Shown here one piece after another: positions 2,931 to 48,121 of a stretch of DNA of 64,000 nt. A program made the translations under genes and the position numbers. The notes under the pieces were generated by a model that ran no database searches, had not been told where the DNA came from, and worked only from the letters and a program-made list of their open reading frames with translations. The first letter of the stretch is position 1; every line of letters begins with the position of its first letter. The DNA lies in contig NW_003314391.1 in assembly GCF_000143415.4 (NCBI RefSeq), positions 62,001-126,000 on the forward strand, given 5' to 3'. Origin of the DNA: Selaginella moellendorffii (Eukaryota; Plantae; Lycopodiophyta).

Positions 2931-4819
2931 TGTAAGTGACTAATTTTTCCATTTTACTTTAGTCACTTAACCACACCTCCGACCACTTGGAGGAGTCTCA
3001 TTCACAACCTCCATAAGTCCAACTCAGGACTTGGGGCTTGCTAGCCCCGAGAACGGCATCCATGCCACTCAACCTTAGCACTTTGTCCAAGTGCTCCACG
3101 TGTCCGATCCCATGACCAACACCCCAAGGCACCACCAACACATCAGCCCGTTACGCTAAGGCCATGCCCATTCACCTTGGTCACACCGGTGGTCTAACAC
3201 CACCTACACCACAGTCCTATCTCTCAAAGGCTAGGGCATCTGTGCATGAGGGATCATCCCCGATCCACTCCTTAGCATCCTTAGGATGCCCACAGACATG
3301 GGGAATAGCCCTCCCCAATATCCCCTTTCTGGTCCCTACCAAGCCCCTTTCTGGCCATGACCGTATTTGCCAACACTGCCACTGGATCAAGGCCCATAGG
3401 CCTGACCACTAAGTCCCACGGTCCTCTGGGACTTCCTCACCACACGATCGTATCCTTAGTCACTACACCAGAGGACTACTCCTTTGCCTTTCCACAGTCT
3501 GGGCCTTCGNNNNNNNNNNNNNNNNNNNNNNNNNNNNNNNNNNNNNNNNNNNNNNNNNNNNNNNNNNNNNNNNNNNNNNNNNNNNNNNNNNNNNNNNNNN
3601 NNNNNNNNNNNNNNNNNNNNNNNNNNNNNNNNNNNNNNNNNNNNNNNNNNNACTTGGACTGGGAGCATCGGCCAGTCGATCTCCCGGGGGAACTAGAGCC
3701 GGCTCTTGAACACTTCACCAAGCTACCCGCTTGTCGGTCTGTGTCACTCTAGTCTTGGACTTCCTAGTGGGCAGCTCATCACCCAACACTGGGTCCGGCC
3801 TTCCTGGGCCAAACTGGCCTTTCCTGGCCAAACTGGCTCCACTGCAGTCCTCCCCCTTACTATACTTTTGGAGCTCACCAAACCCCCCAGGGTTTGGGAG
3901 ACGAACGCTTTGGGCTTTCACCCTCTCAGACTTGAACTCGGACTCGGACTCGAACTTGAACTCGGACTCGGACTCGGACTCGGGCTCGGTCTCGGCCTCG
4001 GCCTCAGTCTCAGTCTCGGTCCCGATCTCGGTCTTGGTCCCGGTCTCGGTCTCGACTTCGGACTCCATCTCGGGTCCATCTCGGACTTCCATCTCGGACT
4101 CCATCTCGGACTCCATCTCGAACTCCATCTCGGGTCCATCTCGGACTCCATCTCGGGTCCATCTCGGACTCCATCTCGGGTCCATCTCGGACTCTATTTC
4201 GGGTCCATCTCGGACTCCATCTTGGGTCCATCTTGGACTCCACCTCAGACTCCATTTCGGGTCCATCTCGGACTCCATCTCGGGTCCATCTTGGACTCCA
4301 CCTCGGACTCCATTTCGGGTCCATCTCGGGTCCACCTCGGACTCCATCTCGGACTCCATCTCGTGCCCATCTCGGGTCCATCTCGGACTCCATCTCGGAC
4401 TCCATCTCGGGTCCACCTCGGGTCCACCTCGGACTCCACCTCGGACTCCATCTCGGGTCCATCTCGGACTCCATCTCGGGTCCACCTCGGACTCCACCTC
4501 GGGGTCCATCTCGGACTCCACTTCGGACTCCATCTCGGGGTCCATCTCGGACTCCACTTCGGACTCCAACTCGGGTCCATCTCGAACACTTCCACGTGTC
4601 ATGTGTTGGTCCTTTTTGGGTCCCTTTTTGGAGCCTCGCCTATGGCTCGCTTCGTGCTCATTCCTTGAGCACTTCTTTGGGAGTTCCACTCCCGCTCTTA
4701 TCTTTTCAAGTCGGAGCTTTTGGTCCAAACGTGTTACGCTCGTTTGGCTCTCGCTTCGGCCAGTACCACGTGGCGCCCTTCCGGCTCCACTTTGGGGCCT
4801 AGGGATTTTGTGTCTCACA
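2931..4819 (-). repeat. 3' LTR (contains assembly gap 3510-3651)
   Basis: Matches 8977-10728. The 142 N correspond exactly to 9556-9697. Confidence 0.95.
3928..4585. repeat. Intra-LTR minisatellite: 6-bp CTCGGA/CTCGGT run followed by 11/12-bp units (CTCGGACTCCAT / CTCGGGTCCAT)
   Basis: Visible tandem array that produces low-complexity ORFs in several frames. Confidence 0.95.
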
Positions 4820-4929
4820 ACTCCACCACCCATAGACGAAGTTTGATGTCCTCATCGAACGGTAAACCATTTTATAAAGTAACACCCGCATGTGTTACCA
4901 TTTCCATCCTTGGCACCTAGCCAATATTT

Positions 4930-5062
4930 GTGAATGGTTTGACATTGAAGGCTCACCATGCCTTCTCCATATTCGTCAATGGTTTGACATTGAAGGCTCA
5001 CCATGCCTTTTGCATATTCTTCAATGGTTTGACACCAAAAGCTCACCATGCTTTGCCTATCC
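4930..5062. repeat. Three ~45-bp tandem repeats
   Basis: AATGGTTTGACA..GCTCACCATGC recurs at ~4933, ~4978 and ~5023. Confidence 0.85.
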
Positions 5063-8000
5063 TCTAAGGAGGGTAGTCTCTCCAACTTAGAGACTGATTG
5101 GACCACATGTAGTGGTTCTCTCCTTTTATTGATTTAGTTCTCGCTAAACCTCTTAGAGACCTTTCTCTAAGTCAATTCCGCTACTCTTTCTCGAGTAGTC
5201 TCAATTTCCATTTATTGAACGTTTGCACCTTGGAACTTTTACTCTTTTGACTTTTGGAAGTCAATTTCCTAGGTGTCTCCAACACCTTGCATTGCACAGA
5301 TTGTGCAACTCCACTTCCCCATCCTAGAAAGTTCATTACTTGAGGGCACCATCATCCTCTCTTCTATTTCGTGCCACCTTGGGCACTAAGTTCCATTTAT
5401 CATACTTTGTGCTAGGGCTGTCCATGGCCCTATCATTTGGCTACCTTACCGCTCCCTCCCTTGGAGCTTCCACTTTCGCCAAATCGGAGCAATTCGGAAT
5501 CCATCCTTGGAAACACACTTCCTTTCCCGCAATTTGTTAGCGTCCAACACATTAGTGTTCCTCGCCTAACTTTGTCACTTGGATTCCTTCCAAGGGATTC
5601 CACGGCTCTATCTTGGCTACTCATCTTTTGCTCCTATCCGTTGATTGTTGCATCAAGCAACATCGAATCTCTACCTCCCCCCTTGAGGTATTCTTTTGAT
5701 TCCATGGCAAAGGCTCGGCTTTGCCAAGACTAGGGTGTTCACCCCTAGTAAGTCTCTTTAGCACCTTCTGCTATGGGCTCTATCCACGGCCCAACTTTGT
5801 GACCCTCCCATGGGTCTCTTTAGAGACTACTTTCCTTGGACACACTATGCCATCGCAATGACATAGCTCATTTCCCTAAGGTGCTTTTCCCACTTGGTTA
5901 CCTTGACCAAGCTACACTATCATCAATAGTTCAAATCAACACTTTGAACTAGGAACCTTATTCCTTAGCCCAAACAAGGACCTTGTCCTTATTTAGCCAC
6001 AAGATCACCTAGTGATCTCACCTCGGCACCTTAACAGGTTTGCCAATAAGTACTAGGTCTTTCAGACCTTTAATTTGTTAACTACGACCCCGGGGCATCC
6101 CCCACACTTGGCGGTGCGCCCAAGCCAGCCCTTCCGGCCAAGGGTCCATAGCAACTGAGATTAGGTGTCCCCATCTCACTCACCACGTCCTTGGTGCCAC
6201 TTGCACCAAAGCGTTCAAGTTAGATATGCCAAGCTTTCACACTAAGCAATCTAACCGTGCATCACGACTCCGAGGCATCCCTCGCTTGGCGGTGTGCCCA
6301 AACCAGTCTCCACACTAAGAGTCTATGACCACCGAAATATGAGTGTCCTCATATTCCAAACCATCACCACGCCCTAGTGATTTGGGACTCGAACCCAAGC
6401 ACTAGAGGGTCGGGACTCGAACCCAACCTCCGTATATGCATCTACGGACGGCATCACACCAGATGCCTGGCGTGACTCCCCACGCCGGTGCACCAACCTT
6501 GATTTAAAGCGTGCTACAGATCACAGCTTAGGAACCTAGTTCCTTCGCACTGCCAAGTCCTCTCACTTGACAAGCCTGTGATCATGCATGGACTCCTCCA
6601 TGCTCGGCCCCATGGGCCACCCCTTTGAAGTTGGCTCCTTCAACTAGGGTATTCGTTCCCCCCGACTTGCCAATATCACTTAGCAAGTCATCCGGCCACT
6701 GTAATATGGTTCATGCGCAAGCGTGAAAGCCCTTGATCCTCGACTTTCATTCAAAGCCTTCTCTTTGAACACTCGGGAACTACTTCCCTAACCTTGATAG
6801 CCTTGCCTCATGGCAAGTTTCAAGACCACGCTTCTATTGCGCCACTCTGATTTCGCGCGTTCCTTGAACCATTTATGTTTGGCCTTTTTAGGTATTAAGC
6901 TACCTAGAATCCTCTTTGGGAACCTTGAAGGAACTCTGTCCCTTAGCTTGCTAAGGCCCCCCTTTTTGCAAGCTTTCCAATTACCATATAGCCTAACATG
7001 GACAATTCCATATTTTAGACTCTCCATGGCATCACGGTTGCTAGCGGCAACACCCTTGAGCCCCCACTTGATTCTCCACTCCTAGCTGGCATAACCAACC
7101 TTGGTTATGCCCTTCAATTCCTATGGTTCGGTTTTATCCCCTTACTTTTTGCTTTTGGCTTCACACCTTTCCTTCGGTCATTCTCCTCCAGACCAAGAGG
7201 ATAGCTTTGCACTTTCTATCATGCCTTAGCAAGTATTCTTAGGGATGAACCTACCCGATAGCCTAGGGAGTGGTTCCTCAATCCAGGTATGCTCACCCTA
7301 TAATCCCACACGCCGGGATTACGTTGTTGCTTACTGGCCTTTGCATGCCCATCGCTAGCCTTGCCAAAATTCCATTTTTGGCTTTATCCAATTCGAGTAG
7401 ACAGTCTTCTCCTATCTCCGCCACCTTGGACATTTGGATAGCACCTACTATCCATCATTCGCTAGGGACTTAGTCCCTTGGGCCTTATCTACTGCCCTCG
7501 CGACATCAAACACCACCTCCTGGTGTTATAGAGTGTTCGGGTGTCCCAATGACGGCTTCCTTGACAATGAGTATTTCCTTTTATAACATTGACTTACTAT
7601 ATTGCAACATAAGCAACTTATCCCCCGTAAGGGTATATCCAACTTCCCTATGCCATCAAGAAGGTTTGGGTAGCTACCTTCTACCCGTTTAACCAATTAT
7701 TTTGCACCTCTTGCTTAGTTGCCCTCGTAGTTGTCAAGTCCTACAACTCATTGCTGGTGCTTCCACACCTCCATCATCATCTGGGTCACCACACTCCAAC
7801 TGCATGCTCTGCAGCTTAGGCTATGCCATTCCCATTTCTATTGGGATTCCTTTGGCAAGGGGTTCTCATGAACCCACCAACATAGCCTCAAGGTATCACA
7901 CCTTGGCACATTTGGTGTCTCCACACCATCGGCTCCACGAGCCTACCTCTATGACACTTCTTCTTTGTGTTTAAGTCTTTGCCAAGACCAATACCACTCT

Positions 8001-8961
8001 TTCTCATGCCAACCATCTGTTAGCACTGCATCATAGAGGTCACACACAACTTTGTGTTAAAATTGTTTTCTTTTTGGGAACACCTTTCCCACGACTTTAG
8101 CATGGCACATTTTGCCATCGATGAGATACCCTCTGTTCTCATCCTTGGATCCTATGATCCCCCCCCCCATCCTTTGTGGGGTACAACACACCTCAGTCCA
8201 AATGCTTCCATCAGTCCTTTTAGGACCATCCCTTGACTCTACTTGAGTCATCTAGCAGTTTTGGACTTGGTTAATCCACAGACCCGTAAGGTCCTACTTG
8301 TGAGGCACTAGCTCACTGGAATACACTTCTTGCATTCCTGTCCTACCCAAAAGGACTATTTTCACAAGTGTTACTCTGACACTTGATTTTGTTCTCTGGG
8401 GGCAACCTTTGCCCCTTAGGACTACTTGTCCATGTGATGAGAGTACCAACTCATCCACTTAATACACCCCCAACTCCTTGGGCTGTTCCAGCATTTATTA
8501 GAGGTAGCCCTGGCTACCATTTCGAGGACTCGTGTCCTCATCCATACTTGACCTCTCACGGTCATCCATTCCGGTCTCACCTTCATGAGCACCAGCCTCA
8601 ACCATGTGAGGATAAACTTGTGACTCCTTTATTGTTTTTGGAGTCTCTATCTTCCCCGTGATCCCAACTATAGTTGTTTACCCCAACTACATTAGCCCAT
8701 TTGCTGAGTCAAACGCTCATCTGGATCACCTCCTCAACTCAATGAGGAAAACCTTGCACTGTTCCCAAGATCCCAAAGTCGTTCCATTATTGGCCCCTTT
8801 TTTATCCACCACCTTGTCTACAAGTTCACACATGAACTGTAATGGAGAGCCATGTCTTCCCGACCTGCTACTCCTCAAGGATAGGCCCACTTCTCGGACC
8901 TTCCGTTGCCAACACTAGTGGTGATATACTTGAGCACCAATAAAAGTCGGACTAAGGAACA

Positions 8962-8973
8962 GCTCCGATACCA
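8962..8973 (-). promoter_or_regulatory. Primer-binding site (tRNA-iMet)
   Basis: Minus strand reads TGGTATCGGAGC, 3 nt after the 5' LTR end. Confidence 0.9.
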
Positions 8974-8976
8974 AGT

Positions 8977-10728
8977 TGTAAGCGACTAATTTTTCCATTT
9001 TACTTTAGTCACTTAACCACACCTCCGACCACTTGGAGGAGTCTCATTCACAACCTCCATAAGTCCAACTCAGGACTTGGGGCTTGCTAGCCCCGAGAAC
9101 GGCATCCATGCCACTCAACCTTAGCACTTTGTCCAAGTGCTCCACGTGTCCGATCCCATGACCAACACCCCAAGGCACCACCAACACATCAGCCCGTTAC
9201 GCTAAGGCCATGCCCATTCACCTTAGTCACACCGGTGGTCTAACACCACCTACACCACAGTCCTATCTCTCAAAGGCTAGGGCATCTGTGCATGAGGGAT
9301 CATCCCCGATCCACTCCTTAGCATCCTTAGGATGCCCACAGACATGGGGAATAGCCCTCCCCAATATCCCCTTTCTGGTCCCTACCAAGCCCCTTTCTGG
9401 CCATGACCGTATTTGCCAACACTGCCACTGGATCAAGGCCCATAGGCCCGACCACTAAGTCCCACGGTCCTCTGGGACTTCCTCACCACACGATCGTATC
9501 CTTAGTCACTACACCAGAGGACTACTCCTTTGCCTTTCCACAGTCTGGGCCTTCGGGACAACATTTCGGAACACCGTGGCCTTACGCAAGCCTCATGGGT
9601 ACTCTCCCCGCCTTTCGCCTTTAGGTGCTCTAGCCATGGGCTTAGAGCGAGGTTCCGTTGAGCCACGACAGGTATCCAAGTAGGTAGTGCCACCCACACT
9701 TGGACTAGGAGCATCGGCCAGTCGATCTCCCGGGGGAACTAGAGCCGGCTCTTGAACACTTCACCAAGCTACCCCGCTTGTCGGTCTGTGTTCACTCTAG
9801 TCTTGGACTTCCTAGTGGGCAGCTCATCACCCAACACTGGGTCCGGCCTTCCTGGGCCAAACTGGCCTTTCCTGGCCAAACTGGCTCCACTGCAGTCCTC
9901 CCCCTTACTATACTTTTGGAGCTCACCAAACCCCCCAGGGTCTGGGAAACGAACGCTTTGGGCTTTCACCCTCTCAGACTCGAACTCGGACTCGGACTCG
10001 GACTCGGACTCCGACTCGGGCTCGGTCTCGGCCTCGGCCTCGGTCTCGGTCTCGGTCCCGATCTCGGTCTCGGTCCCGGTCTCGGTCTAGACTTCGGACT
10101 CCATCTCAGGTCCATCTCGGACTTCCATCTCGGACTCCATCTCGGACTCCATCTCGGACTCCATCTCGGGTCCATCTCGGACTCCATCTCGGGTCCATCT
10201 CGGACTCCATTTCGGGTCCATCTCGAACTCCATCTCGGGTCCATCTCGGACTCCACCTCGGACTCCATTTCGGGTCCATCTCGGGTCCATCTCGGACTCC
10301 ATCTCGGACTCCATCTCGTGCCCATCTCGGGTCCACCTCGGACTCCACCTCGGACTCCATCTCGGGTCCATCTCGGACTCCATCTCGGGTCCACCTCGGA
10401 TTCCACCTCGGGGTCCATCTCGGACTCCACTTCGGACTCCATCTCGGGGTCCATCTCGGACTCCACTTCGGACTCCAACTCGGGTCCATCTCGGACACTT
10501 CCACATGTCATGTGTTGGTCCTTTTTGGGTCCCTTTTTGGAGCCTCGCCTATGGCTCGCTTCGTGCTCATTCCTCGAGCACTTCTTTGGGAGTTCCACTC
10601 CCGCTCTTATCTTTTCAAGTCGGAGCTTTTGGTCCAAACGTGTTATGCTCGTTTGGCTCTCGCTTCGGCCACTACCACGTGGCGCCCTTCCGGCTCCACT
10701 TTGGGGCCTAGGGATTTTGTGTCTCACA
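8977..10728 (-). repeat. 5' LTR
   Basis: TGTAAGCGAC...GTCTCACA. Its minisatellite (~9975-10495) is shorter than in the other LTR. Confidence 0.95.
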
Positions 10729-10797
10729 AAAGTCTTTGCATATGCAACTTGAGTCAAAAATTCTAACAAAAGTTCAACAGGAATCGCTAAAATAATT

Positions 10798-11786: not shown

Positions 11787-12926
11787 CTACTTGTGAAACT
11801 CCAGGATTGCTAGTCCATTGGAGACGTTGACAAGATGCACTTTGTTGAAACCAGCTTGTTCGGCGAGCGCCTGATACTCTTCAAAGGTCCGCTCCTTGCC
11901 GTTGAAATTAACCATCATGACAAGATCTAGGAGCAGTCCGATTCGCAACTCAAACTCACTGGCAGCTTGATAAGCTTCAGAAGGTAGTAAAACTTCCACG
12001 ACAATGACTTTCCCTCCCTGAGCAGGAAGGGATTTGTAGCAGTTTTGCAGGATCTTCAGGCACTGTTCGTCGTTCCAGTTGTGGAGAATCCACTAGAAAG
12101 GAATGAAACACCAGATTGGCAAGGAGAATTTGACTCTGGATCCTTTACCTTCAACATGATTGAATCTCCTTGGGGAATTGATCCGAACATGTCGCCACCA
12201 GCATGCTCCACTCCTGGAAGAAGTAAACAAAGAGTGCTTGAATGATCGAGCATGAAAAATCTGTGAGAGGATACCTTCAGATGCAATTCCCTGAGAAACA
12301 ACATGGGGCTGATCGAAATTTATGCCTTTGATATGCGGATAGCGAGTTCGAATGTCACACAGCAATGCTCCATTGCCGCCACCAACATCGACCAGAGTTT
12401 TGATGCTTGCAAATCCCTTGTAGCAATCCAGCAGCACAGCACTGGACCTCTTGGAATGATCGGCCATGCAGAGGTTGAAGCTGTTGTTGAATTCCGGCTC
12501 CTCAGCCACAAGCTCGTATGCGGTTTTGCCGTGGGCTTTGCGGAATGGCTCGCCACCATCAAGAATGCCTTCGGCAAGATGCTCGAAAGGCTTGAGGAAG
12601 ATCCGGTGATTGCACATGACACTCAAACCACGCGCTGCCAATTTCGTTCCTGGAGAAAAACGCTTGCCTATCTCGGAGAGCCCATACTTGCGCTGCCCCT
12701 GCACAACGGTCTCGTTCACAACCCCGTAAGTTGCCAGAACTCGGAGAGTTCTGTCCAGAAATGCAACATTCGCAGATGGGTTGTTTGTAATCCGGGAAAC
12801 AATCTCAGAAGCAGAGAGGACCGAATCTGCTATCTCGTCGAAGGCTCCCAGCTTCACCACCGCATTGAGAGCGAGGGGGATAGTAGCATAGAGGACGAGC
12901 TCCTCACCAGGAGCAAACGCAGCCAT
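11787..12926 (-). CDS. Class II (COMT-like) SAM-dependent O-methyltransferase, 340 aa; exons 12926-12275, 12213-12149, 12092-11787
   Basis: Motifs LVDVGGGNG, INFDQPHV, GGDMFGSIP, WILHNWND and GKERT. GT-AG introns of 61 and 56 bp give an intact frame. Confidence 0.93.
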
Positions 12927-13378
12927 GAAATCCGAGGTGAATGGTGAAGATGAAACAGCGTGCCACAGGTGGATTGTGAAACTTTGAGGGAGCACTATAA
13001 ACTAAAATGGAGCTCTACAAACAAGTGAGCAAATTCTACGCTTTTTATATCGACAGAGACCTAGATTTTGACTAGTGGTTGGTCACATTGAGTGCCTGCT
13101 GCGTGCAACCATGGGACTCTTCCATCACAGAAGGTGACATACCACACATTGTTTGCATTTCCAGACAATTGTTGAATCTTCTGTTTCCGTTTTGGAAGTT
13201 CTACTTTGAAATCGATCCATGGACAAGTCCAAATCCAAAGCCTCTACTGACTTAAGTATGAATCATGAGACAACTTTTTGTAACTGAATTTATTTGTAGT
13301 CTATTTTTTTTCAATAACTTGTTTCAAATTCATTGAATTAAAACATTTATTTTATATTATTATTTAATTGCTTACATG

Positions 13379-14368
13379 CTACAGAAATCCCTTCTCTTTG
13401 AAGCTCTCCACTGAATCAAACAGACACTTCCCAATGTTTATCAGCTCTGATTCCAGCAATTGACGGGCTTTGGCATTGCATATCTTGTATGGAACGGCTT
13501 CAGGATTTTTGGTGTCTGAGCAGATTTTAGGAACTGGGAGCTGCGGGTACAGCTCTGCCAGCATTTCCACAAGCCTCGCCCTGTGGATCGATCTCTCTGC
13601 CAGAAAATACCTCCCAAATGCTTTTGGATCTTCGAAAGCCGCAACATGAGCCAGTGCCACATCCCTCACGTCCACATATGCCTGGCAGCGATTTGCGTAG
13701 CTCTTCACGCATCCGGTCAGATACTTGAGAATGTGGGTGCTGCTCGCATTCAGCTTGGGCTGAAGAACTGGACCCATCACGACTGCTGGGTTGATCACAA
13801 TCAGTTTGAAACCATTGCCTTGGGCAGCAGCGAACTCCCATGCGGATTTTTCAGCCAGAGTCTTCGCCAGGCAGTACCACTCCTTGATCTGGACAAGGTA
13901 CTCCACATCGCTCCAGCATGATTCATCCACTGGCTGCTCCAGAGGCCGAGTTGGATCCAAATACATGGCACCCACCGAGGACGTCATCACAACAGTGGAA
14001 ACTCCAGAACTGAAGCTGGCTTTCAGGACGTTGAGTGTGCCTTTCACTGAAGGCTCGATCAGCTCGGTCTGCGGATTAGTAATTCGGAAATTCGCCTCTG
14101 GACAGGGGCATGCCGTGTGGATCACAACTTGGCAACCTGCAGTTGCCGCGACTAGGCTATTGTCGAGCAAATCAGCTTTTACGAGCTCCAGCCTCTGGTT
14201 GGCCCCCTTGAGATTTTTGAGGTGTTCCACCTTGCGCAAATCCTCTGGATCTCGGACTGCTCCACGTACAGTATAGCCTTTGTCAAGGAGGTATTTGACA
14301 ATCCAGGATCCAATGAAACCCGATGCTCCAGTGACACAAACCATCATCCCTCGCAACTGAGCCATCAT
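13379..14368 (-). CDS. Cinnamoyl-CoA reductase-like NADPH-dependent reductase (CCR/DFR extended SDR family), intronless
   Basis: VCVTGASGFIGSW Rossmann motif, TSSVGA, EWYCLAKTLAEK (canonical CCR has NWYCY), YVDVRDVA. TATA ~35 bp upstream. Confidence 0.93.
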   Translation of the reverse strand: MMAQLRGMMVCVTGASGFIGSWIVKYLLDKGYTVRGAVRDPEDLRKVEHLKNLKGANQRLELVKADLLDNSLVAATAGCQVVIHTACPCPEANFRITNPQTELIEPSVKGTLNVLKASFSSGVSTVVMTSSVGAMYLDPTRPLEQPVDESCWSDVEYLVQIKEWYCLAKTLAEKSAWEFAAAQGNGFKLIVINPAVVMGPVLQPKLNASSTHILKYLTGCVKSYANRCQAYVDVRDVALAHVAAFEDPKAFGRYFLAERSIHRARLVEMLAELYPQLPVPKICSDTKNPEAVPYKICNAKARQLLESELINIGKCLFDSVESFKEKGFL

Positions 14369-14979
14369 CCCTCACGTCTGGTGTTTACTCTCAACATTTC
14401 TATTTATAAGACCTGAAAAATTGGATCATTGTAAGTAATCCAAAACTTGGAAGGTCAAATAAAAGAGGCGCAAGAAGATCTTTTATTCGCAAGAAAGTTC
14501 AAATTTTTGGGTGGGTGGGAGAGATTCCGGGTCCTCCCATGTTATAGGATTCGTGCTGTGAGGGCTGAATGTTGCGAGATCTACTGAAACGAACATCCGG
14601 GTCGTCCATCATAGTGTTTGGGCCGTCCTGCCCAGGAAGGACATCAAGAATGTTTCTTGAAGGAGGTAGATGTAAGGTCAAATAAAGGAGTGATTTTCTC
14701 CCATGCTATACATATGTAGCTTTTGCCTGGGATCCGCCCTGAGCCACAGCATGCCATCCCCCACCGCTCTTATTATCACTCTGGAGGACAGAATGAGGCA
14801 TAAGAACACTGCCTGTAAAAGACTTCACTTGTAAAACTACCACCTGTAGTCATTCGGCCCTTGTCAAGCACAAAGATCTCAGGCTCGTGCTTTCAAGGTC
14901 CGTCACATGGGCAGCTCTGTGAATACTTGCTGGTGTATAAATTCTCTACGGCCCTCGTCTCAGCTCTGCCTCACCAATA

Positions 14980-16766
14980 ATGGATGTCATCTCGGTTCTT
15001 CTTGTCGCACTCGTGCTTGCATTTTCTGTTCTATGGATGGTGTGCAGCTTCCTCATGCGCTACTATTGGGTGGCCAGTGCTCTCCGTCCAGTGATGGAGA
15101 AGCAAGGCATACGAGGCTCACCCAATCCTCCGAATCCCATCTTTGATGTTTTCTATGGGAAGCCTGACATGAAGGAGATCAGCCACGATATTCTGCCTCA
15201 TGTTCTTCCCTGGGCCGCACAGCACATCAAATTCTATGGTGGGATTCAATTTAATTTCACAACATTATTAGTGTACTTTCAAATTCACTTTGACTTTCAG
15301 GGAACGTACACTTGAACTGGTGGCTGCGGGAGCCCCGGATTGTGATCTCAGAGCCCAAGATAATATGGGATCTGTTGATGAAGAAGCACAAGGATTTCGT
15401 CAAGTCCCACTTCATCAAAGTCTTTTCTGATGATATCTTTCATAAGGGTCTCTTCCATGCAAATGGAGAAGATTGGGCCCGGCAGAGACAGATTGTAGCG
15501 CCCAGATACTACATTGACGAAGTCAAGGTGATACTCCATTAACAAAGTCAAAGTCTAAGGTTGACTGAACTCTATTGCACAGGCAATGGTTGGAGCTGTG
15601 AACAATGCAACAAGCCAAGTCATGGCAAAATGGGAAGCCTTTGTGAAGGACAGTGGAGACGTGGAGAGGGAGCTGGATGTTCAAGTTGAGTTCATGAACT
15701 TGAATGTGGATGTTGTAGCGAGGACAACACTGGGGTTGGAAAACAGTGACTTTCAGAACATTCTCAAGTATAGCATCACATTGCTCAACCTGCAAGATGG
15801 TCAAGAGACCTGGAGCTGGTTACCATTTGCCAGGTACAGGTGGCTTAAGGAAAAAGCATATGAACTGTACTGACTTACGGAAGATATTGTGGTGCAGGCT
15901 GATCCCCTTCGGTATAAACGTTGAACGGTGGAAAGTACGGAAACAGTTTAATGACCTTGTTCGTAAGCAAGTGAGAGAGAGAAGAAAGAGGACGACAGGC
16001 AATAACGTTGATTTTATTGGGATGCTCTTGGATAATCCAGATGTTAGAGAAGACGTGATTGTCGCCGAGTTGAAAACACTCTATGCTACAGGGTTTATCA
16101 GCTTGGCCCCACTTCTCTCATTCACAATGTTGATGCTGGCTCTCTATCCCGATTGGCAAGAGAAGGCAAGACAAGAAGTTGACCAAGTTCTGGATGGAGA
16201 AGTTGACCAAGTTCTGGATGGAGAAGTTGTTAGTCCCAAAGATGTCAGCAAGCTAACCACGGTAACCAGTTAATCAGATTTGTCCTTTGATCCACATAAC
16301 TGAGCTTGCTGTATGGTTCTTGTTTGTGCAGATTGAGATGATTCTGCGAGAGACATTGAGGCTGTATCCCACAATGCCGCTCATCGCCAGGGTGTGCATT
16401 AAAGACACTATGCTGGGGGACGTGTTCATTCCCAAAGGACTGGGGGTGAGCGTTAATGTCGTTGCGCTGCATCATGACCGAGATCTGTGGGGAGATGATG
16501 TAAATGAATTCAACCCATCCCGCTTCAAGAATGGTACTGCAACTGCAGCCAAGCATCCCATGGCGTTCATGCCATTTGCCTATGGAGTTCGAACCTGCAT
16601 TGGAAGGGCCTTCTCTGAGATGCAGTGCAAAATAATCATTGCTAACATCCTTCAGAGATTCGAGGTTAAATTGTCTCCAAATTACCGGCACCACCCAGTC
16701 ATTACAGGACCCCTGATCCCAAAGCATGGCATGCCTGTCATACTCAAGCCAAGGCGGAACTTCTAA
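14980..16766 (+). CDS. Cytochrome P450, CYP72-clan-like, 511 aa; exons 14980-15238, 15301-15527, 15583-15833, 15898-16261, 16332-16766
   Basis: N-terminal membrane anchor, WARQR, WQEKARQEV, ETLR, FNPSRF, heme motif FAYGVRTCIG. Four phase-consistent GT-AG introns. TATAAA at ~14936. Confidence 0.93.
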
Positions 16767-19235: not shown

Positions 19236-19352
19236 CAAATGTAAAACTATATAGCCAATACTACAAGAAACAGCCTTTGGGATGTTCTCACAGGTTAGCA
19301 ATTCGTTGATAACGTTTGTTTTGTTGGCTCACATTGTTTTTCTTTCTCTCAG

Positions 19353-19950
19353 GTGTCTACTTGTACAAACTGTGGTGGTGAGGGTGAAGTGATTTTCGAT
19401 CACTGCAGAAAATGTGGAGGCAAAGGAGGTATTCGACCAAAAAAAACAATCAAACTAAGTGTTCCATGTGGAGTTGACAGCGGGAGCACTCTCCGTGTTG
19501 CTGGTGGAGGAGATGCTGGAGAAAGAGGGTGAGCTTAAATCTTGTGCTTGTTCTATATAGTTTCTTTCTGATTGACTGTACCCTTTCTCAGTGGTCCATC
19601 CGGGGATCTCTACGTCAATCTTAAAATCAGAGACATGCCTGGAATTCGAAGAGACGGCATCAATCTTTACTCCGAGATCTCTGTGAGCTATACGGAATGT
19701 ATACTCGGGACAACAAAAAAGGTATGTTTCGCTGTTCTCTCGTATCTTAGTTGTATAAAACACAACTCTAACAGGTGAAGACGCTGGAAGGATTCTCGGA
19801 TCTTCGTATTCCTGCGGGAACTCAACTAGGGGCATGTATAACTCTTCCGAAGATTGGTGTTCCAAGGCTTCGAAAGACCTTATCTTTTTCTTCTTCTACA
19901 GTGCCGCTGAGAAAGAACTCGTGGAAGAACTGGCTCGTCTCGAGAAAACA
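19353..19950 (+). pseudogene. Type I DnaJ (Hsp40) gene fragment with introns, lacking the J-domain
   Basis: CTNCGGEG..CRKCGGKG zinc finger, VPCGVDSGSTLRVAGGGD, GPSGDLYV, RRDGINLYS. GT-AG introns retained. Confidence 0.85.
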
Positions 19951-20962
19951 TTGGCAAGTGTAAGCGTGTGTCATCCCCCATGTAAAAGCCAACAGTGGAG
20001 ATTGAATCGAGTTCTACCATCCTATCCACTGAAAGAGCTGTGTAAGGATTCCTTTGTTCGTCTGGCAATGGCTTTGACGAAACAATCTTGGTACTTTTGG
20101 CTACATTCCTAGGATCTCACAAATTTGGCGATGTCCTTATTAGAAGTTTTTAGTGCTTTAGAAAAATAACATGTTAACAATATATAAGGCATAGCTTCAT
20201 CAAATCTTAGGCATTGAGGAGACATGGTTGTTGGAAATTTTTTGTGGATGTTGCTCTCAGCCAATGGGAGAGCCTCACAGCTTGGGTCTTCAGTTAGACA
20301 AGATATTTAACACATGTCCAGTTGAGTTTAAAGGTGAACTTTGTGGGCCGCTAGATAGTGCCATCTGATGGGGGTGGGTTATAGATGAGAGGATAGTTGA
20401 AGCTGCTGGTGAGCTATTGGAAGACTTGAAGGATTGATACATCGAGATGCCTCTTGTGGCTATAAAGGTTTCCCATTGTGTCATATTCAACACGTTCAAC
20501 CACAGGAAGGTGAATGAAGATTGGGTTCAACAGTTGATGCAGTCCGTGCTCAAGAATCCACAAGTCCCGGACATTGGTGTTGTAATACCATATAAAAAAA
20601 AGGGGGGGGGGGGGCAATGCAATCCACATTACTCACTCGTTTCAAAGATGAGTACTTGGAGCGCTCCAACGTGAAGTTTCTCATAGTCTCCAGGCAACAC
20701 TTACGCCTCCCAACATGCCATAGAGTATCAAGGACAAGTTTCAGTTCCACATCGACTTCTTTTGAGAAGGTCATCACAATATCGTCTACAGCAAACACCA
20801 ACAAAAAGGAGTGGTTCAAGTCTTACATCTGGGAGATGCTTGAACACACTTGTTTCCATTGGAAGAAGTTGGATTGTCCAAGGAAGCTGGGCACTGGAAA
20901 AGCAAAGAAGGGGATTTCCTTTCAGGTTAGTCCAATCATGATAACAGGAGATCTCTTGTACT

Positions 20963-22523
20963 AAATTGTTTTTTACTGCAGGACTTTGAGGAGATTGCAA
21001 AGAAAACTTGAAAAAAGATTGCAATCTGGTGTACCACCCTTGGTTCAATGTCATCAAGGATTATGAGAGTGGAAACCTCTTCAACATACTTGGGAAGCAA
21101 GATGGGAAAACCACAATCTTCTCTTCAGTTAAGGGCTGAAAGAGTTTTTTGGAATGGTTTTAAATGTATAATAAGAGGTTTTTGGCATGGTTGACCCAAC
21201 TTGAGATATTATCTAATTTCTTACTGGGCATGTTTATCTTTGTTTTGAGTTTGACTTGCCATATGGAGTATTTATAAAATAATGTCAAATTCCACTTTTG
21301 GCCATATTGTTTTTGGTGTTTAACTCTAATATTGATCCTCTGTTATTCTGTACTCTTATTACTTCGCTCATTGGTTGTATATTGAGAGTTAGTTAACCTT
21401 GAAACTCGGATCTCACTTTATTACTTTTGGCACATATATTGAAGAGTTAGGCTTTGCACCTTGGTTATCTTATGATAATTATGAGATTTATTATAAAGTA
21501 TAAAGTCAAAACCACATGTGGTGCATTTAGTAATATAGGGAATAATCTTAGCAAATACTATCTAATGCAGGGAGGGGATTTTGAGTGTATATTTAATCTT
21601 TATTTCGTAATGCAATAGGATTGTACTTTGACTCCAAATTCATATGTGCTAAAGGAGTCTAATTCTCACTTTTATTTTTTTGAGTTGATTATAAATTTTT
21701 ATTAGCAATATCTATGCAAACTAAGTCTTACACCACTTAAATTGCTTCTTAGTGCTTAGTATGAAGTGTGTTTTTAATTTAAACATTTGTTGATGGGATT
21801 TGAACTCAAGAACTGTTATCATATATTGATTCTAAATTTAAATTAGGTTTTTGGATTTATTGGTAGTTTTTTTTTTCCCATCTTTCAATGACATGCTCCT
21901 GACACTAATAACTTATATAATATTTGAAAATAACAACAACTTTTGTTTCAATGAAAACATGTGAGATAAATATTATCTATATTTTCTTAAGCATAAAAAC
22001 TTGTTATAATACAAGTCATTTAAATTGCAATAATAATCTTATACAAATAAACATACTAGTCATCGCATAGAAATGCTTTGTTTGCTTAAGTTAATAGTTG
22101 TGTTATTCTATTTATTATCCAATTGATCAAATGGAAGTTTATAATTAATTAACATATTTATAATTTATAACACAAGATTAATCTTATTATATATCAACTA
22201 TTAGAAGGTAGAATAAACTAGAATATACTTAAAAGTGTTTATGAAAGTTTATAAATTATAAAGTTATTTATATATTATAAATACAGAATTAATCTAAATA
22301 AATAACAACCATTAGTTGATAAAATATCCCAAAATATCAAAGTATATTCTAAATTTATTCATTACCATCTAACATTTAAATGTATGCTGGAGCTGGGAAG
22401 GATTATTTGGATAGCAGCATCTGGCAATCCAAAAGCTTTGGAGATCATAGTATGAGCAGAATCCCCAGTAGATGGAATGCAACCTGTGAGGCAAGCACTT
22501 CAACTCTTCCAATTGCAACAGGC
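20963..22523. repeat. Right arm of the inverted repeat
   Basis: Reverse complement of 17617-19235, with a ~55 bp deletion near 21857. Confidence 0.95.
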
Positions 22524-41998: not shown

Positions 41999-43257
41999 TT
42001 TCTTGGATCTGCAGAGAAACGAATGCAAAGTGGGTTTTATAGTCGCTAGTTTGGCTGTAGTGACACTGGGCCCAAGCGAAGGCTGTGCGCCACATATATT
42101 GATATACGCTCACAGCCAAAGGCTCGCATATCTGATATATGTCACCATATGTCACAGACTCGAGTCGCGACATGCCCGATGGTACACTGGTCCCAAACCA
42201 AGAGATGACTATGGTACGGGTACGTCTATATTCGATTCTCTAGATATTTTACAGCTAAACATAACTTGACAACAAAAGTACTGACTACTCTTTGAGACGT
42301 GTTTGTGAGTTTGGTGTGGATGGACGGGTAGGTGGCACATATATCCAGGTCAGCGCTGCTTATCATCTAGATCTGTGGTGAGAGCTTGGGATCTTTAGGT
42401 ACTTAGATACGAATATCTTGCATTGCTCCAGTGCCGCTTTCAAAATGACCAGCACTGATCTTCAAATCCAGCAAACCAGCGGAGAAATAAACACTTGACA
42501 AGAAATCACAAGTTCCTTTTTAAGTTGGGAGGCTTGATTCGCTGGGCAAGACGTCCAACATGAACTTGGCCATGATTGGCTTAAACACACAAGGCCCATC
42601 AAGTTTGAATGTGCAAGCGCCGGGATTGACAGATGATTGACGTAAACCATCCAAGCAAAACAAACAAGTTCATGTCAGGTGCTTAATCCCACTAATATAC
42701 ACCCATGCCAGTGTGTAATCAACCTGGTACAATCCTCAGCTCTTGTAGCGCTGGTGAGCCAAACGTGCATCTTACCGTGCTTTGGCAACGTGTTTAACCC
42801 GGGGCAGCAAAACTCTCTCCATTCGAAATGAGCCACGTGGCATAAAGGCCGCATCTCGCCACGTGGCCGGGTCACGGTTGATGAGATTGACGATGATGGG
42901 TGAATGCAAAAAATATTTCTGAATATTTAAAAGATGCTTTTAGAATCTTTTCATTTTTTTAGGTTTTTTAAGTTTGAAGCTGACAAACGCGTTTGGAGCA
43001 TAATTTGGCGTTTGCAAACGCGTTTGCGTCTATGCGTTTGCAACGTTTGTGCGTCTGCCTGGTAAGTATGTATCAAACCCTACCCGGTGTGGCTTCAGTC
43101 GTGATTGCTGCAAGATCGTTCACCTTCTTCATGCTTGGTGTTTGGCTTCAGCTTTCGGAGAGCAGAAAAAAGACTGTTAGAAGCTTGGAACTTGGAAGTG
43201 GTTTTCTGATAAAAATTAAATCTTTCTTGGCTGTGAACAATGGTAACTGACTACTAC

Positions 43258-47190: not shown

Positions 47191-47692
47191 TGGAGGCTCC
47201 GATATCTTCCAAATGGCTCGCAAAGATAAAGTATCCTTCATCTTGAGGAATTTATGTGCTTTTCGATTTTACGTCTACCAGCAGTGTGGACATACTGGAT
47301 AATCTTCGCGATTCTATCTATGGGCACGTAGAAATCGATGTCTCCTGGAGTCTCTTCGTAGCGGTCTTGCCCCAAAAAGGGTGTCTAAGTTTCGATCCCA
47401 TTTATAATCTAGCAAATCAAAAGAAACACGCAAACTCCTAAAAATGTCACCGTGTTGGAACGTTGAAAAATCATAAACTGAGCTAAATTTCAATATTTAC
47501 GTGTATAGTAGTGTAGTCGATGTAGTAGAAATTTTGCATTCTAGCCGCAATGTGGAGTCATGTACTAGCTGAGTAGTCAAGATAAGCGTCGCTCCCAGGA
47601 CTATATAAACAAGGCCTTTCCAGAGCTCAACTCATCTCTAGTTAAAGTTGTTTACTCATTTTCTTCTTGGTTATTTCTTGTTCTATCTCATT

Positions 47693-48121
47693 ATGGCATT
47701 TCGCGAGGTTTTCTTCCTGTGTATGCTGGTCTCGACCCTCTCCATCACCCAGGTAAGAAACTCTCATTCACTTGTCCCGCAAGAAGCTCACAATTTGGAT
47801 ATCTTACTCTTACAGGCTTGCCAGTTTTCTCGATCCTGCACTGATATCACCTTCGACAGGAATTCGACCGTGATGAGAGCCATTTGTAGCACATCCAATT
47901 TGGAAAGGAGGAACGCCTCCATCGATGTGAACAATTGCGTGGGCAGCAGCAATGGTGTCCTCGACTGCTCATCCAACTTTGCCTCACGATGCATCAACAT
48001 CAGCTTCAATGGGCTCAACGTGGCTGCCCGTTGCAACCGCGGGGATGGCGTTCTCGTCTCTTCCACTCGCAACCTCGACGATTGCATCCAGAACGTCGAG
48101 GGAGTTCTCCAGTGCTGCTAG
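47693..48121 (+). CDS. Secreted CVNH lectin, copy B; exons 47693-47752, 47816-48121
   Basis: As copy A, but retains a TATATAAA box at 47602-47609 and a pyrimidine-rich leader. Confidence 0.9.
   Translation: MAFREVFFLCMLVSTLSITQVRNSHSLVPQEAHNLDILLLQACQFSRSCTDITFDRNSTVMRAICSTSNLERRNASIDVNNCVGSSNGVLDCSSNFASRCINISFNGLNVAARCNRGDGVLVSSTRNLDDCIQNVEGVLQCC

What the first reader, a model, noticed from the sequence alone, without database searches (positions are those of the whole stretch)
11787..16766. Compact candidate biosynthetic gene cluster: OMT + CCR-like reductase + P450
Seen: three intact, non-homologous tailoring enzymes within 5 kb, separated by only ~450 and ~610 bp and bounded by retroelement and pseudogene debris. 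The reductase and P450 are head-to-head, each with its own TATA. Known: Selaginella's independently evolved syringyl-lignin genes (SmF5H and SmCOMT) are also physically linked. This P450 looks CYP72-clan-like, so it is probably a different pathway. Inference: a reduce/oxidise/methylate module for an unknown phenolic or other specialised metabolite. No scaffold-forming enzyme lies in the window.
Basis: partly seen in the sequence, partly recalled or inferred. Interest (0 to 1): 0.75.

Follow-up and report, generated by a model that had tools for sequence, protein, structure and literature searches.

The report
Spikemoss P450–CCR–methyltransferase gene trio
Three intact enzyme genes (a known lignin-pathway reductase, an unusual methyltransferase and an orphan P450) sit within 5 kb in the spikemoss Selaginella moellendorffii and were copied together several times, but nothing yet shows that they work in one pathway.

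Summary
Window 11787-16766 of Selaginella moellendorffii scaffold GL377695.1 carries three intact genes. They are a 3-exon COMT-family O-methyltransferase (340 aa), an intronless reductase (329 aa) and a 5-exon CYP72-clan P450, with spacers of 452 and 611 bp.

- **Reductase.** It is not merely CCR-like. It differs at 1 of 328 residues from SmCCR2-1, which two papers cite as a genuine cinnamoyl-CoA reductase in vitro.
- **P450.** It has no relative above about 41% identity outside its own paralogs. It sits on a long branch in the cytokinin-hydroxylase (CYP735-like) lineage. It has lost the I-helix acid-alcohol pair.
- **Not the known cluster.** This is not the SmF5H-SmCOMT locus.
- **Copies.** A near-identical twin of the block lies 21.4 kb upstream. 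A diverged copy (dS about 0.04) lies on another scaffold. There are also decayed pieces and a solo P450 paralog.
- **Expression.** All three genes have reads or contigs in RNA-labelled runs, but at unequal levels.
- **Synteny.** Linkage is absent in Diphasiastrum.

A shared pathway is plausible (about 30%) but unproven. The scan had already found this trio on other DNA of this genome (s1-380553). Interest is moderate.

The parts
11787..12092 (-). OMT exon 3 (101 codons plus the stop). It carries WILHNW with the catalytic His, and GKERT.
   Evidence: The spliced joint 12092/12149 is seen in 2 raw RNA-seq runs and 2 contig sets. Pfam PF00891.
12149..12213 (-). OMT exon 2 (65 nt), encoding GVEHAGGDMFGSIPQGDSIMLK.
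   Evidence: Both flanking joints are seen.
12275..12926 (-). OMT exon 1, from the start ATG at 12926. It encodes the dimerisation domain and the SAM-binding motif VDVGGGNG.
   Evidence: PF08100, PF00891; 100% identical to P0122, 340 aa, named 'caffeic acid 3-O-methyltransferase [S. moellendorffii]'.
12927..13378 (.). 452-bp spacer between the OMT start codon and the reductase stop codon. The two genes lie in tandem on the minus strand.
   Evidence: The spacer is 99.6% identical to the twin copy but only about 82% identical to the GL377572.1 copy.
13379..14368 (-). Intronless cinnamoyl-CoA reductase gene, SmCCR2-1 or its near-identical copy. The product is 329 aa, or 328 aa from the second Met.
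   Evidence: 327 of 328 residues identical to ARC76938.1, 'cinnamoyl-CoA reductase2-1'. In one search the PDB CCR structures 4R1S, 4R1U and 5TQM score E 1e-101 to 1e-97, against 1e-76 for the best DFR-type entry.
14369..14979 (.). 611-bp head-to-head spacer between the reductase and the P450. TATA-like motifs lie at 14402-14409 (minus strand) and 14936-14942 (plus strand).
   Evidence: Only the promoter-proximal parts are conserved in the diverged paralog: 14369-14428 at 97.7% and 14798-14979 at 91.7%. The centre is rearranged.
14980..15238 (+). P450 exon 1, encoding the membrane anchor.
   Evidence: tblastn with paralog P0426. A few RNA-seq reads are seen.
15301..15527 (+). P450 exon 2.
15583..15833 (+). 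P450 exon 3, long form. The NCBI model of the window copy (P0391) omits the 22 codons that end this exon; from the sequence I infer a donor within CTCAAGTATAG near 15767.
   Evidence: The 22 extra codons are conserved in frame in paralog P0426 and align to the F-G region of all relatives. No junction reads were found.
15898..16261 (+). P450 exon 4, long form. It holds the I-helix, which reads LKTLYATGFISLAP in place of the consensus AGxETT.
16175..16222 (+). Two tandem 24-bp units inside exon 4. They add eight residues in frame (EVDQVLDG repeated). Only the window copy has the second unit.
   Evidence: The annotated proteins differ accordingly, P0391 (483 aa) against P0241 (475 aa). The second unit is absent from L002, L003 and L005.
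16332..16766 (+). P450 exon 5. It carries ETLR, PSRF and the haem-binding motif FAYGVRTCIG, and ends with the stop codon.
   Evidence: (PF00067, E 5e-39).
3652..10729 (.). Flank, not part of the trio. A non-coding LTR retroelement, with repeat-rich LTRs of about 1.1 kb, inserted about 1 kb beyond the OMT 3' end.
   Evidence: The twin copy L002 joins window position 10728 directly to 2930. The LTR pair 3652-4820 and 9698-10729 is about 91% identical.
19263..21762 (.). Flank. A truncated and decayed DnaJ copy, carried along with the duplicated block.
   Evidence: 168-aa DnaJ_C model; intact 461-aa DnaJ beside the trio on GL377572.1; 87-97% identity.

Best explanation
What is shown:
- The block holds three real, individually functional-looking genes of Selaginella moellendorffii.
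- The reductase is SmCCR2-1. Published work says it reduces hydroxycinnamoyl-CoA esters to aldehydes.
- The OMT is a diverged COMT-family, SAM-dependent phenolic O-methyltransferase.
- The P450 is an orphan offshoot of the cytokinin-hydroxylase-like lineage of the CYP72 clan.
- The P450-CCR-OMT unit was copied as a block, together with a piece of the neighbouring DnaJ gene. The ancestral-looking site is on scaffold GL377572.1. The window's scaffold then gained a tandem twin.

What is inferred, and is my most likely reading:
- The adjacency arose in a gene-dense genome and was spread by segmental duplication.
- It is not a dedicated, co-regulated three-step pathway.
- The CCR serves hydroxycinnamaldehyde and monolignol supply. 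The OMT and the P450 each serve their own specialised-metabolite reactions.
- The trio therefore remains a candidate cluster, not a demonstrated one.
For: Gene integrity and identity:
- Gene models and integrity.
- The OMT introns are confirmed by spliced reads.
- The reductase is 327/328 identical to ARC76938.1, 'cinnamoyl-CoA reductase2-1'. It has the EWYCL and H-x-x-K motifs that the literature ascribes to the active SmCCR2-1.

Copies:
- The twin 21.4 kb upstream has identical coding sequence, apart from one synonymous site and the 24-bp repeat.
- The copy on GL377572.1 sits between MCM/DnaJ and Bap31/C48 genes. The window copies carry only a DnaJ fragment. This gives the direction of duplication.

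Against a dedicated pathway:
- Contig depth is unequal in one run: OMT 202.6, CCR 14.8, P450 none. Raw RNA-seq coverage is low for all three.
- The P450 has an intact solo paralog with unrelated neighbours. Against the window copy it has dS 0.088 and dN/dS 0.36.
- In Diphasiastrum the closest CCR and P450 relatives lie 1.48 Mb apart, with no OMT nearby.
- The P450 falls in the CYP735-like group, support 95/85. From general knowledge, no phenylpropanoid ring hydroxylase is known in the CYP72 clan.
- The central part of the head-to-head spacer is not conserved between paralogs.
Against: - The three enzyme classes are exactly those of the aldehyde node of syringyl-monolignol synthesis: CCR, then a P450 hydroxylase, then COMT.
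- The same genome has a proven P450-OMT phenylpropanoid cluster, SmF5H-SmCOMT.
- The OMT and the P450 stay intact in every full copy. Between the diverged copies, dN/dS is 0.08 for the OMT and 0.57 for the P450.
- Both are lineage-specific orphans, as is typical of specialised metabolism.
- All three genes have reads or contigs in the same RNA-labelled runs.
- The expression evidence against co-regulation is thin. It rests on four runs, contig depths and a 12% sample of the raw reads.
Confidence: 0.5

Rival explanations
1. A true three-enzyme module at the hydroxycinnamaldehyde level. SmCCR2-1 makes the aldehyde from a hydroxycinnamoyl-CoA. The orphan P450 oxidises it, on the ring or the side chain. 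The OMT methylates the new or a neighbouring hydroxyl. The product would be a Selaginella-specific phenylpropanoid, lignan or lignin-like monomer. The unit was amplified because it works as a unit.
For: - The enzyme classes match the CCR, F5H, COMT order of the syringyl pathway.
- A phenylpropanoid P450-OMT cluster already exists in this species.
- The reductase is a genuine CCR, so the substrate class is fixed.
- The closest solved relative of the OMT is the S. moellendorffii OMT that methylates caffeic acid and luteolin.
- The block stays intact in three copies, with purifying selection on the OMT (dN/dS 0.08) and a constrained P450 (dN/dS 0.57).
- All three genes have reads or contigs in RNA-labelled runs.
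Against: - The P450 belongs to the CYP735-like lineage, not to an A-type phenylpropanoid P450 family.
- Its I-helix lacks the acid-alcohol pair.
- A solo P450 paralog exists.
- Expression levels are discordant in the few data.
- There is no linkage in Diphasiastrum.
- Segmental duplication copies whatever is adjacent, so co-amplification is not evidence of selection for linkage.
Confidence: 0.3
2. A two-gene partnership. SmCCR2-1 and the COMT-family OMT co-operate in phenylpropanoid aldehyde metabolism. They are tandem, on the same strand, 452 bp apart. The P450 is an unrelated neighbour.
For: - Both families are established phenylpropanoid enzymes.
- A decayed copy elsewhere fuses CCR and OMT fragments into one gene model, P0123 (SELMODRAFT_432354). 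The pair was therefore adjacent in that copy too.
- CCR and OMT both give contigs in runs X1 and X2, where the P450 gives little or nothing.
Against: - The chimera only reflects the same duplicated block.
- OMT and CCR depths differ more than ten-fold in X2.
- The OMT pocket differs from COMT at substrate-contact positions. MsCOMT N131 aligns to Cys, and the MSN motif reads MAD. Hydroxycinnamaldehydes are therefore not an assured substrate.
Confidence: 0.15
3. The tandem twin on scaffold GL377695.1 is an assembly artefact: two haplotypes laid end to end. The copy number of the trio would then be lower than it appears.
For: - The two copies are 99.25% identical over 8.2 kb and their coding sequences are identical.
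- From general knowledge, the reference assembly holds both haplotypes.
- Assembly gaps lie nearby.
Against: - The copies differ by a 7.1-kb LTR insertion and by a 24-bp repeat.
- They are embedded in a longer repeated pattern, with a third partial unit.
- The same window holds another duplicated gene pair, at 39437-42028 and 57674-60265.
- This rival does not affect the existence of the trio itself.
Confidence: 0.25

Closest known systems
SmF5H (CYP788A1) - SmCOMT syringyl-lignin gene cluster of Selaginella moellendorffii (Weng et al. 2008, 2011, as summarised in PMC8416159)
   Same: - It is in the same species.
- A P450 and a COMT-family OMT are physically linked.
- Its chemistry acts on hydroxycinnamaldehydes and alcohols, which are the products of a CCR.
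- Other first-reader notes of this scan also report CCR-like genes near that locus. I did not check this.
   Different: - It is a different locus and has different genes.
- Four published SmF5H primers have no match in the window.
- The P450 here is non-A-type, from the CYP72 clan and the CYP735-like lineage.
- The OMT here carries MAD where SmCOMT is reported to carry MTN.
- No biochemical or genetic evidence ties the three genes here together.
SmCCR2-1 (Chao et al. 2017, Planta 246:33; GenBank ARC76938.1)
   Same: - The window's reductase is identical at 327 of 328 residues.
- It has the same EWYCL variant of the NWYCY signature and the same H-x-x-K substrate-binding motif.
   Different: - There is one substitution, V125A.
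- I could not read the primary paper. The activity claim rests on two later papers that cite it.
- In the papers I could search, I found nothing that describes the gene's genomic neighbours.
SmOMT (XP_002963872.1; PDB 9WAM), a promiscuous S. moellendorffii O-methyltransferase
   Same: - It is the best solved-structure match to the OMT (E 1.2e-83).
- It has the same fold family, catalytic His and Glu, and SAM-binding motifs.
- It is even similar at the C-terminal end...EFHK.
   Different: - It is a diverged relative: 284 bits, against 256 bits for the best angiosperm COMT.
- Pocket residues differ.
- Its substrates are caffeic acid, luteolin, coumarins and others. They cannot be transferred to this OMT.
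Cytokinin trans-hydroxylase CYP735A and other CYP72-clan families (CYP72A, CYP734A, CYP709, CYP749)
   Same: - The P450 groups with the lycophyte, fern and angiosperm 'cytokinin hydroxylase' sequences (support 95/85).
- It keeps the haem-binding, ExxR and PxRF motifs.
   Different: - Identity to any named family member is 35% or less, and 41% to its one S. moellendorffii sister.
- It sits on a long branch.
- Its I-helix reads TGFISL in place of AGHETT.
- The NCBI name 'P450 734A1' is not supported by the tree.
Plant metabolic gene clusters in general (for example avenacin, thalianol, noscapine), as predicted by plantiSMASH-type rules
   Same: Three or more non-homologous enzyme genes lie side by side. 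The members are lineage-specific and fast-evolving.
   Different: - There is no scaffold-forming enzyme.
- Co-expression is not shown.
- There is no product and no genetics.

Membership tests
Plant biosynthetic gene cluster | Three or more non-homologous enzyme genes physically adjacent. | tested here: met
   OMT, CCR and P450 lie within 4,980 bp.
Plant biosynthetic gene cluster | The genes are co-expressed. | tested here: inconclusive
   All three have reads or contigs in RNA-labelled runs. Contig depth in X2 is 202.6, 14.8 and 0 for OMT, CCR and P450. Raw reads are few for all three. Four runs are too few to judge.
Plant biosynthetic gene cluster | The gene products act in one pathway. | not testable with these tools
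   This needs enzyme assays or genetics.
Plant biosynthetic gene cluster | A scaffold-forming or signature enzyme is present. | tested here: not met
   No such gene is in the window or in the flanks of the paralogous copies. CCR is the entry step of the monolignol branch but does not build a scaffold.
Plant biosynthetic gene cluster | Linkage is conserved in related species. | tested here: not met
   In Diphasiastrum complanatum the nearest CCR and P450 relatives are 1.48 Mb apart, and neither has the others within 10 kb. Within S. moellendorffii the block recurs only through duplication.
Genuine cinnamoyl-CoA reductase (EC 1.2.1.44) | A Rossmann NAD(P)-binding GxxGxxG motif and the SDR Ser-Tyr-Lys catalytic residues. 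| tested here: met
   VTGASGFIGSW and the YxxxK within WYCLAK both align to Petunia CCR1, PDB 4R1S. Pfam PF01370.
Genuine cinnamoyl-CoA reductase (EC 1.2.1.44) | The NWYCY signature motif. | tested here: not met
   The motif reads EWYCL. The literature reports that the active SmCCR2-1 carries exactly this variant.
Genuine cinnamoyl-CoA reductase (EC 1.2.1.44) | The H202-x-x-K205 substrate-binding motif. | tested here: met
   THILKY aligns to HILKY of Petunia CCR1. The motif is defined.
Genuine cinnamoyl-CoA reductase (EC 1.2.1.44) | Reduces hydroxycinnamoyl-CoA esters in vitro. | not testable with these tools
   PMC12044727 and PMC12693918, citing Chao et al. 2017, report this for SmCCR2-1. 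SmCCR2-1 is 327/328 identical to the window's protein. The primary paper is not held.
COMT-type (Methyltransf_2) plant O-methyltransferase | An N-terminal dimerisation domain plus the C-terminal SAM-dependent O-methyltransferase domain. | tested here: met
   PF08100 and PF00891. The match to COMT structures runs the full length.
COMT-type (Methyltransf_2) plant O-methyltransferase | The catalytic His and Glu, and the SAM-binding motifs. | tested here: met
   WILHNW, GKERT, VDVGGGNG, INFDQPHV and GGDMF are aligned. The H259/E319 dyad of SmOMT is described.
COMT-type (Methyltransf_2) plant O-methyltransferase | The caffeate / 5-hydroxyconiferaldehyde pocket: M130-N131 and the MSN motif. | tested here: not met
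   The position of N131 aligns to Cys, and MSN reads MAD. The family is right, but COMT substrate specificity is not assured.
SmF5H-SmCOMT cluster | Contains CYP788A1 (SmF5H). | tested here: not met
   Four published SmF5H primers have no match with up to 3 mismatches anywhere in the 64-kb window. This assumes the primers target the native sequence. Other scan notes place the COMT-F5H pair on other pieces of the genome.
Cytochrome P450, CYP72 clan | The haem-binding FxxGxRxCxG, ExxR and PxRF motifs. | tested here: met
   FAYGVRTCIG, ETLR and PSRF. PF00067.
Cytochrome P450, CYP72 clan | The I-helix (A/G)Gx(D/E)T(T/S) oxygen-activation motif. | tested here: not met
   TGFISL aligns to the consensus AGHETT. 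The sister protein P0431 has TGHMSL. The Gly is kept and Ser replaces the Thr.
Cytochrome P450, CYP72 clan | At least 40% identity to a named CYP family, which is the nomenclature rule for family membership. | tested here: not met
   The best relative that is not a paralog is at 38-41% (P0431, itself unnamed). All named relatives are at 35% or less. The protein groups with CYP735-like sequences in the tree.

The most novel reading that the evidence does not exclude
The trio is a second, independently assembled hydroxycinnamaldehyde-level pathway unit in Selaginella. A CYP735-derived, non-A-type P450 with a remodelled I-helix oxidises the product of SmCCR2-1, and the divergent COMT-family enzyme methylates it. 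That would be a further independent origin of phenylpropanoid hydroxylation, in a P450 clan not known for it, and a second phenylpropanoid gene cluster in an early vascular plant.
Probability: 0.08. Interest if true: 0.8.

Novelty: new member of a known kind. Interest (0 to 1): 0.4.

Why it matters
Selaginella is the textbook case of independently evolved syringyl-lignin genes that are physically clustered. A second linked set with the same three enzyme classes (CCR, P450, COMT-type OMT), built around a biochemically validated CCR, is a ready-made test. It can show whether gene clustering of phenylpropanoid steps recurs in early vascular plants, or whether such trios are by-products of a compact, duplication-prone genome.

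Either answer is useful:
- A positive result would give a new pathway and a new catalytic role for a CYP72-clan P450.
- A negative result would be a concrete caution against reading function from adjacency in this genome.

As it stands the finding is a reasonable candidate, not a discovery. The same trio was already flagged by this scan on another piece of the genome.

Tried and rejected
1. **Is this the known SmF5H-SmCOMT locus?** Rejected.
   - SmF5H primers are absent from the window.
   - The OMT matches the characterised SmOMT only as a diverged relative.
   - The P450 is non-A-type.
2. **Is the intronless CCR a retrocopy inserted between the other two genes?**
   - The only support is the lack of introns, whereas the Diphasiastrum relative has introns.
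   - No target-site duplication was found. The longest words shared by the two flanks are 8-mers.
   - Only an A8 run lies downstream. The idea is unsupported.
3. **Do reads settle the two alternative P450 donor sites?** No junction reads were recovered. The long model rests on homology only.
4. **Is the laccase near the upstream copy part of a lignin-type cluster?**
   - It is a single first-exon fragment next to an assembly gap, and the next gene is a Kelch protein.
   - This is not evidence for a cluster.
5. **Primary papers.** Weng 2008, Weng 2011 and Chao 2017 are not held. Their content is cited only through later papers.
6. **Papers naming these genes.** A search by locus tags found none. 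The Selaginella expression-atlas preprint text does not mention CCR, COMT or F5H by name.
7. **Joined spliced model.** I searched exon by exon by reference and used the database proteins P0391, P0241 and P0426 instead.

Full report
**Where we are**

The window is Selaginella moellendorffii reference scaffold GL377695.1 (GCA_000143415.2), at about positions 62001-126000. The annotated OMT protein P0122 is encoded at record positions 73787-74926. That corresponds to window 11787-12926. An earlier follow-up on the same window had also named the species.

**The three genes**

*OMT, minus strand*
- It has three exons: 12926-12275, 12213-12149 and 12092-11787. The two introns are 61 and 56 nt.
- The product is 340 aa and identical to P0122.
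- Both introns are removed exactly as modelled in two raw RNA-seq runs and in two sets of assembled contigs.
- It has the dimerisation and Methyltransf_2 domains.
- The catalytic His (WILHNW), the Glu (GKERT) and the SAM-binding motifs align to COMT structures.
- Two COMT pocket positions are changed. The residue aligned to N131 is Cys. The MSN motif, which a preprint uses to define the COMT pocket, reads MAD.
- Its N-terminal 217 residues find nothing above about 41% identity outside this species.
- The best solved-structure match is SmOMT of the same species (PDB 9WAM, E 1.2e-83). SmOMT is a promiscuous enzyme that methylates caffeic acid, luteolin and coumarins. The match is only modestly better than to angiosperm COMTs.

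*Reductase, minus strand*
- It is a single ORF, 14368-13379.
- Its 90% cluster contains ARC76938.1, 'cinnamoyl-CoA reductase2-1 [Selaginella moellendorffii]'. The window's protein differs from it at one residue of 328.
- Two later papers state that SmCCR2-1 carries EWYCL in place of the NWYCY signature, yet is a genuine CCR in vitro. They also describe H-x-x-K as the more reliable CCR motif.
- The window's protein has both EWYCL and HILK. It scores far better against CCR structures (E 1e-101 to 1e-97) than against DFR-type enzymes (1e-76 and weaker).
- It is 50-56% identical to CCR1 proteins of seed plants and Diphasiastrum.
- So 'CCR-like' should read 'CCR'.

*P450, plus strand*
- It has five exons. 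My model gives 511 aa.
- The 504-aa model of a paralog (P0426) uses the same exon ends.
- The NCBI models for the window copy and its twin (P0391 with 483 aa, P0241 with 475 aa) use two earlier donor sites. These drop 22 and 6 codons.
- Those codons are conserved in frame in the paralog. They align to conserved parts of every relative. I therefore prefer the long form, but no junction read settled it.
- The haem-binding, ExxR and PxRF motifs are intact.
- The I-helix reads TGFISL where relatives have AGHETT. The only sister protein (P0431, 41% identical) has TGHMSL.
- Outside its own paralogs nothing exceeds 38-41% identity.
- Its nearest solved structures are CYP4B1, CYP3A, CYP97A3 and P450 BM3. 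That marks it as non-A-type.
- In a maximum-likelihood tree of 33 CYP72-clan proteins it joins P0431 (support 100/99) on a long branch. The pair lies inside a group (95/85) that holds the lycophyte, fern and angiosperm 'cytokinin hydroxylase' sequences. It does not join CYP72A, CYP734A, CYP709 or CYP749.
The NCBI name '734A1' is not supported.
- The window copy alone has a 24-bp in-frame tandem repeat at 16175-16222.

**Not the known cluster**

[quoted passage not shown] Several results separate this locus from it:
- Four SmF5H primers printed in a paper's supplement have no match in the 64-kb window, even allowing three mismatches.
- The OMT is a different protein from the characterised SmOMT.
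- SmCOMT is reported to carry MTN where this OMT has MAD.
- First-reader notes place the COMT-F5H pair on other pieces of the genome.

**Copies**

| Copy | Location | Content | Divergence from the window copy |
|---|---|---|---|
| Twin | 21.4 kb upstream on the same scaffold, outside the window | P450-CCR-OMT | 99.25% identical over 8.2 kb. Coding identical except one synonymous site in the OMT and the 24-bp repeat |
| Diverged copy | GL377572.1 at 1.56 Mb | P450-CCR-OMT, with intact MCM and DnaJ genes on one side and Bap31 and a C48 peptidase on the other | OMT dS 0.034, dN/dS 0.08. P450 dS 0.041, dN/dS 0.57. CCR 2 synonymous and 7 non-synonymous changes. Spacers much more diverged |
| OMT at scaffold edge | Start of GL377572.1 | OMT only; the scaffold begins inside the OMT-CCR spacer | 95.8% DNA identity over 1.9 kb |
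| Chimera | 15.5-kb contig | One gene model (P0123) that fuses CCR and OMT fragments | Decayed |
| Solo P450 | GL377569.1 | P450 among unrelated genes | dS 0.088, dN/dS 0.36 |

- The window copy has in addition an LTR element (3652-10729) inserted just beyond the OMT.
- The window copies carry only a DnaJ fragment. GL377572.1 therefore looks like the source site, and the block was copied as a unit.
- Whether the tandem twin is real or two haplotypes laid end to end cannot be decided here.

**Beyond this species**

In Diphasiastrum complanatum the nearest CCR relative and the nearest P450 relative lie on one chromosome but 1.48 Mb apart. Neither has a partner within 10 kb. These are distant relatives (35-56% identity), so the test is weak. 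No other Selaginella genome was reachable.

**Expression**

| Run | OMT | CCR | P450 |
|---|---|---|---|
| X2 (contig depth) | 202.6 | 14.8 | none |
| X1 (contig depth) | about 11 | 3-6 | only the first exon, at 2.9 |
| Two raw RNA-seq runs (12% sampled) | a few reads | a few reads | a few reads |

- All three genes have reads or contigs in RNA-labelled runs, the P450 weakly.
- Nothing here argues for tight co-regulation, but the data are too thin to exclude it.
- Between the diverged paralogs, only the promoter-proximal 60 and 180 bp of the head-to-head spacer are conserved. The middle is rearranged.

**Reading**

The facts fit two stories.
- *For a module.* The three enzyme classes are exactly those of the aldehyde node of syringyl-monolignol synthesis. 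The species has a precedent. The substrate class is anchored by a validated CCR. The OMT and the P450 are lineage-specific and under constraint in every full copy.
- *Against a module.* The P450 comes from a lineage with no known phenylpropanoid role (general knowledge of the CYP72 clan). It has a solo paralog. Expression is unequal. Linkage is not seen outside the species. Segmental duplication copies neighbours whether or not they co-operate. Sub-kilobase spacers are ordinary here.

My estimates are:
- about 50% that the three are neighbours without a common pathway;
- about 30% for a true three-step module;
- about 15% for a CCR-OMT partnership with an unrelated P450.

**Standing**

This is a new candidate member of a known kind of feature, a plant metabolic gene cluster. 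It is not yet a demonstrated one. One of its genes is already characterised. In the papers I could search, none names these genes by locus tag or describes the trio. The scan had flagged the same trio on another piece of this genome, with a similar verdict (s1-380553). I reached the SmCCR2 identification from that lead and verified it independently.

Noticed in passing
window 3652-10729: A non-coding LTR retroelement with about 1.1-kb LTRs full of short tandem repeats. It is inserted about 1 kb beyond the OMT. It is absent from the otherwise 99%-identical twin copy, so the insertion is very recent.
   Followed up: partly
window 16175-16222: A 24-bp in-frame tandem repeat in P450 exon 4. It adds EVDQVLDG between the J and K helices. 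It is present only in the window copy. Its effect on the enzyme is unknown.
   Followed up: partly
window 15767-15833 and 16244-16261: The NCBI models of this P450 (483 and 475 aa) skip 22 and 6 codons. The paralog's 504-aa model and all relatives keep them. This is either a likely mis-annotation or alternative splicing. Reads did not decide.
   Followed up: partly
window 14544-14837: A 294-nt contig (depth 7.4) from a run guessed to be RNA lies in the middle of the CCR-P450 spacer. This part of the spacer is not conserved in the diverged paralog. It could be a 5' UTR, a small transposon transcript or DNA carry-over.
   Followed up: no
L002 20593-20874 (GL377695.1, about 19.6 kb upstream of the window start): The first exon of a laccase-like multicopper oxidase, with a signal peptide and the start of Cu-oxidase_3. 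It lies 9.4 kb beyond the upstream OMT copy. An assembly gap follows, and then a Kelch gene. It is a fragment or a gene broken by the gap.
   Followed up: partly
15.5-kb contig of the same assembly (protein P0123, SELMODRAFT_432354): A gene model that fuses a CCR fragment to OMT fragments. It is a decayed further copy of the block. An earlier scan note (s1-361340) flagged it as a chimera.
   Followed up: partly
L005 10001-11754 (GL377569.1:240753-262506): An intact solo paralog of the P450 (504 aa, 84-93% identical exon by exon). It lies among unrelated genes (Tmemb_14, SUV3 helicase, PPR).
   Followed up: yes
window 13379-14368: SmCCR2-1 has no introns, whereas its Diphasiastrum relative spans 2.1 kb for 314 aa. 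No retroposition hallmarks were found.
   Followed up: partly
window 47648-48121: An ORF with a clear CVNH (cyanovirin-N homology) domain, Pfam E 8.5e-20.
   Followed up: no
window 39437-42028 and 57674-60265: Two equal-sized 863-aa ORFs. They are the bacterial-type metalloprotease already followed up by this scan. They show that this stretch of the scaffold is rich in recent segmental duplication.
   Followed up: no
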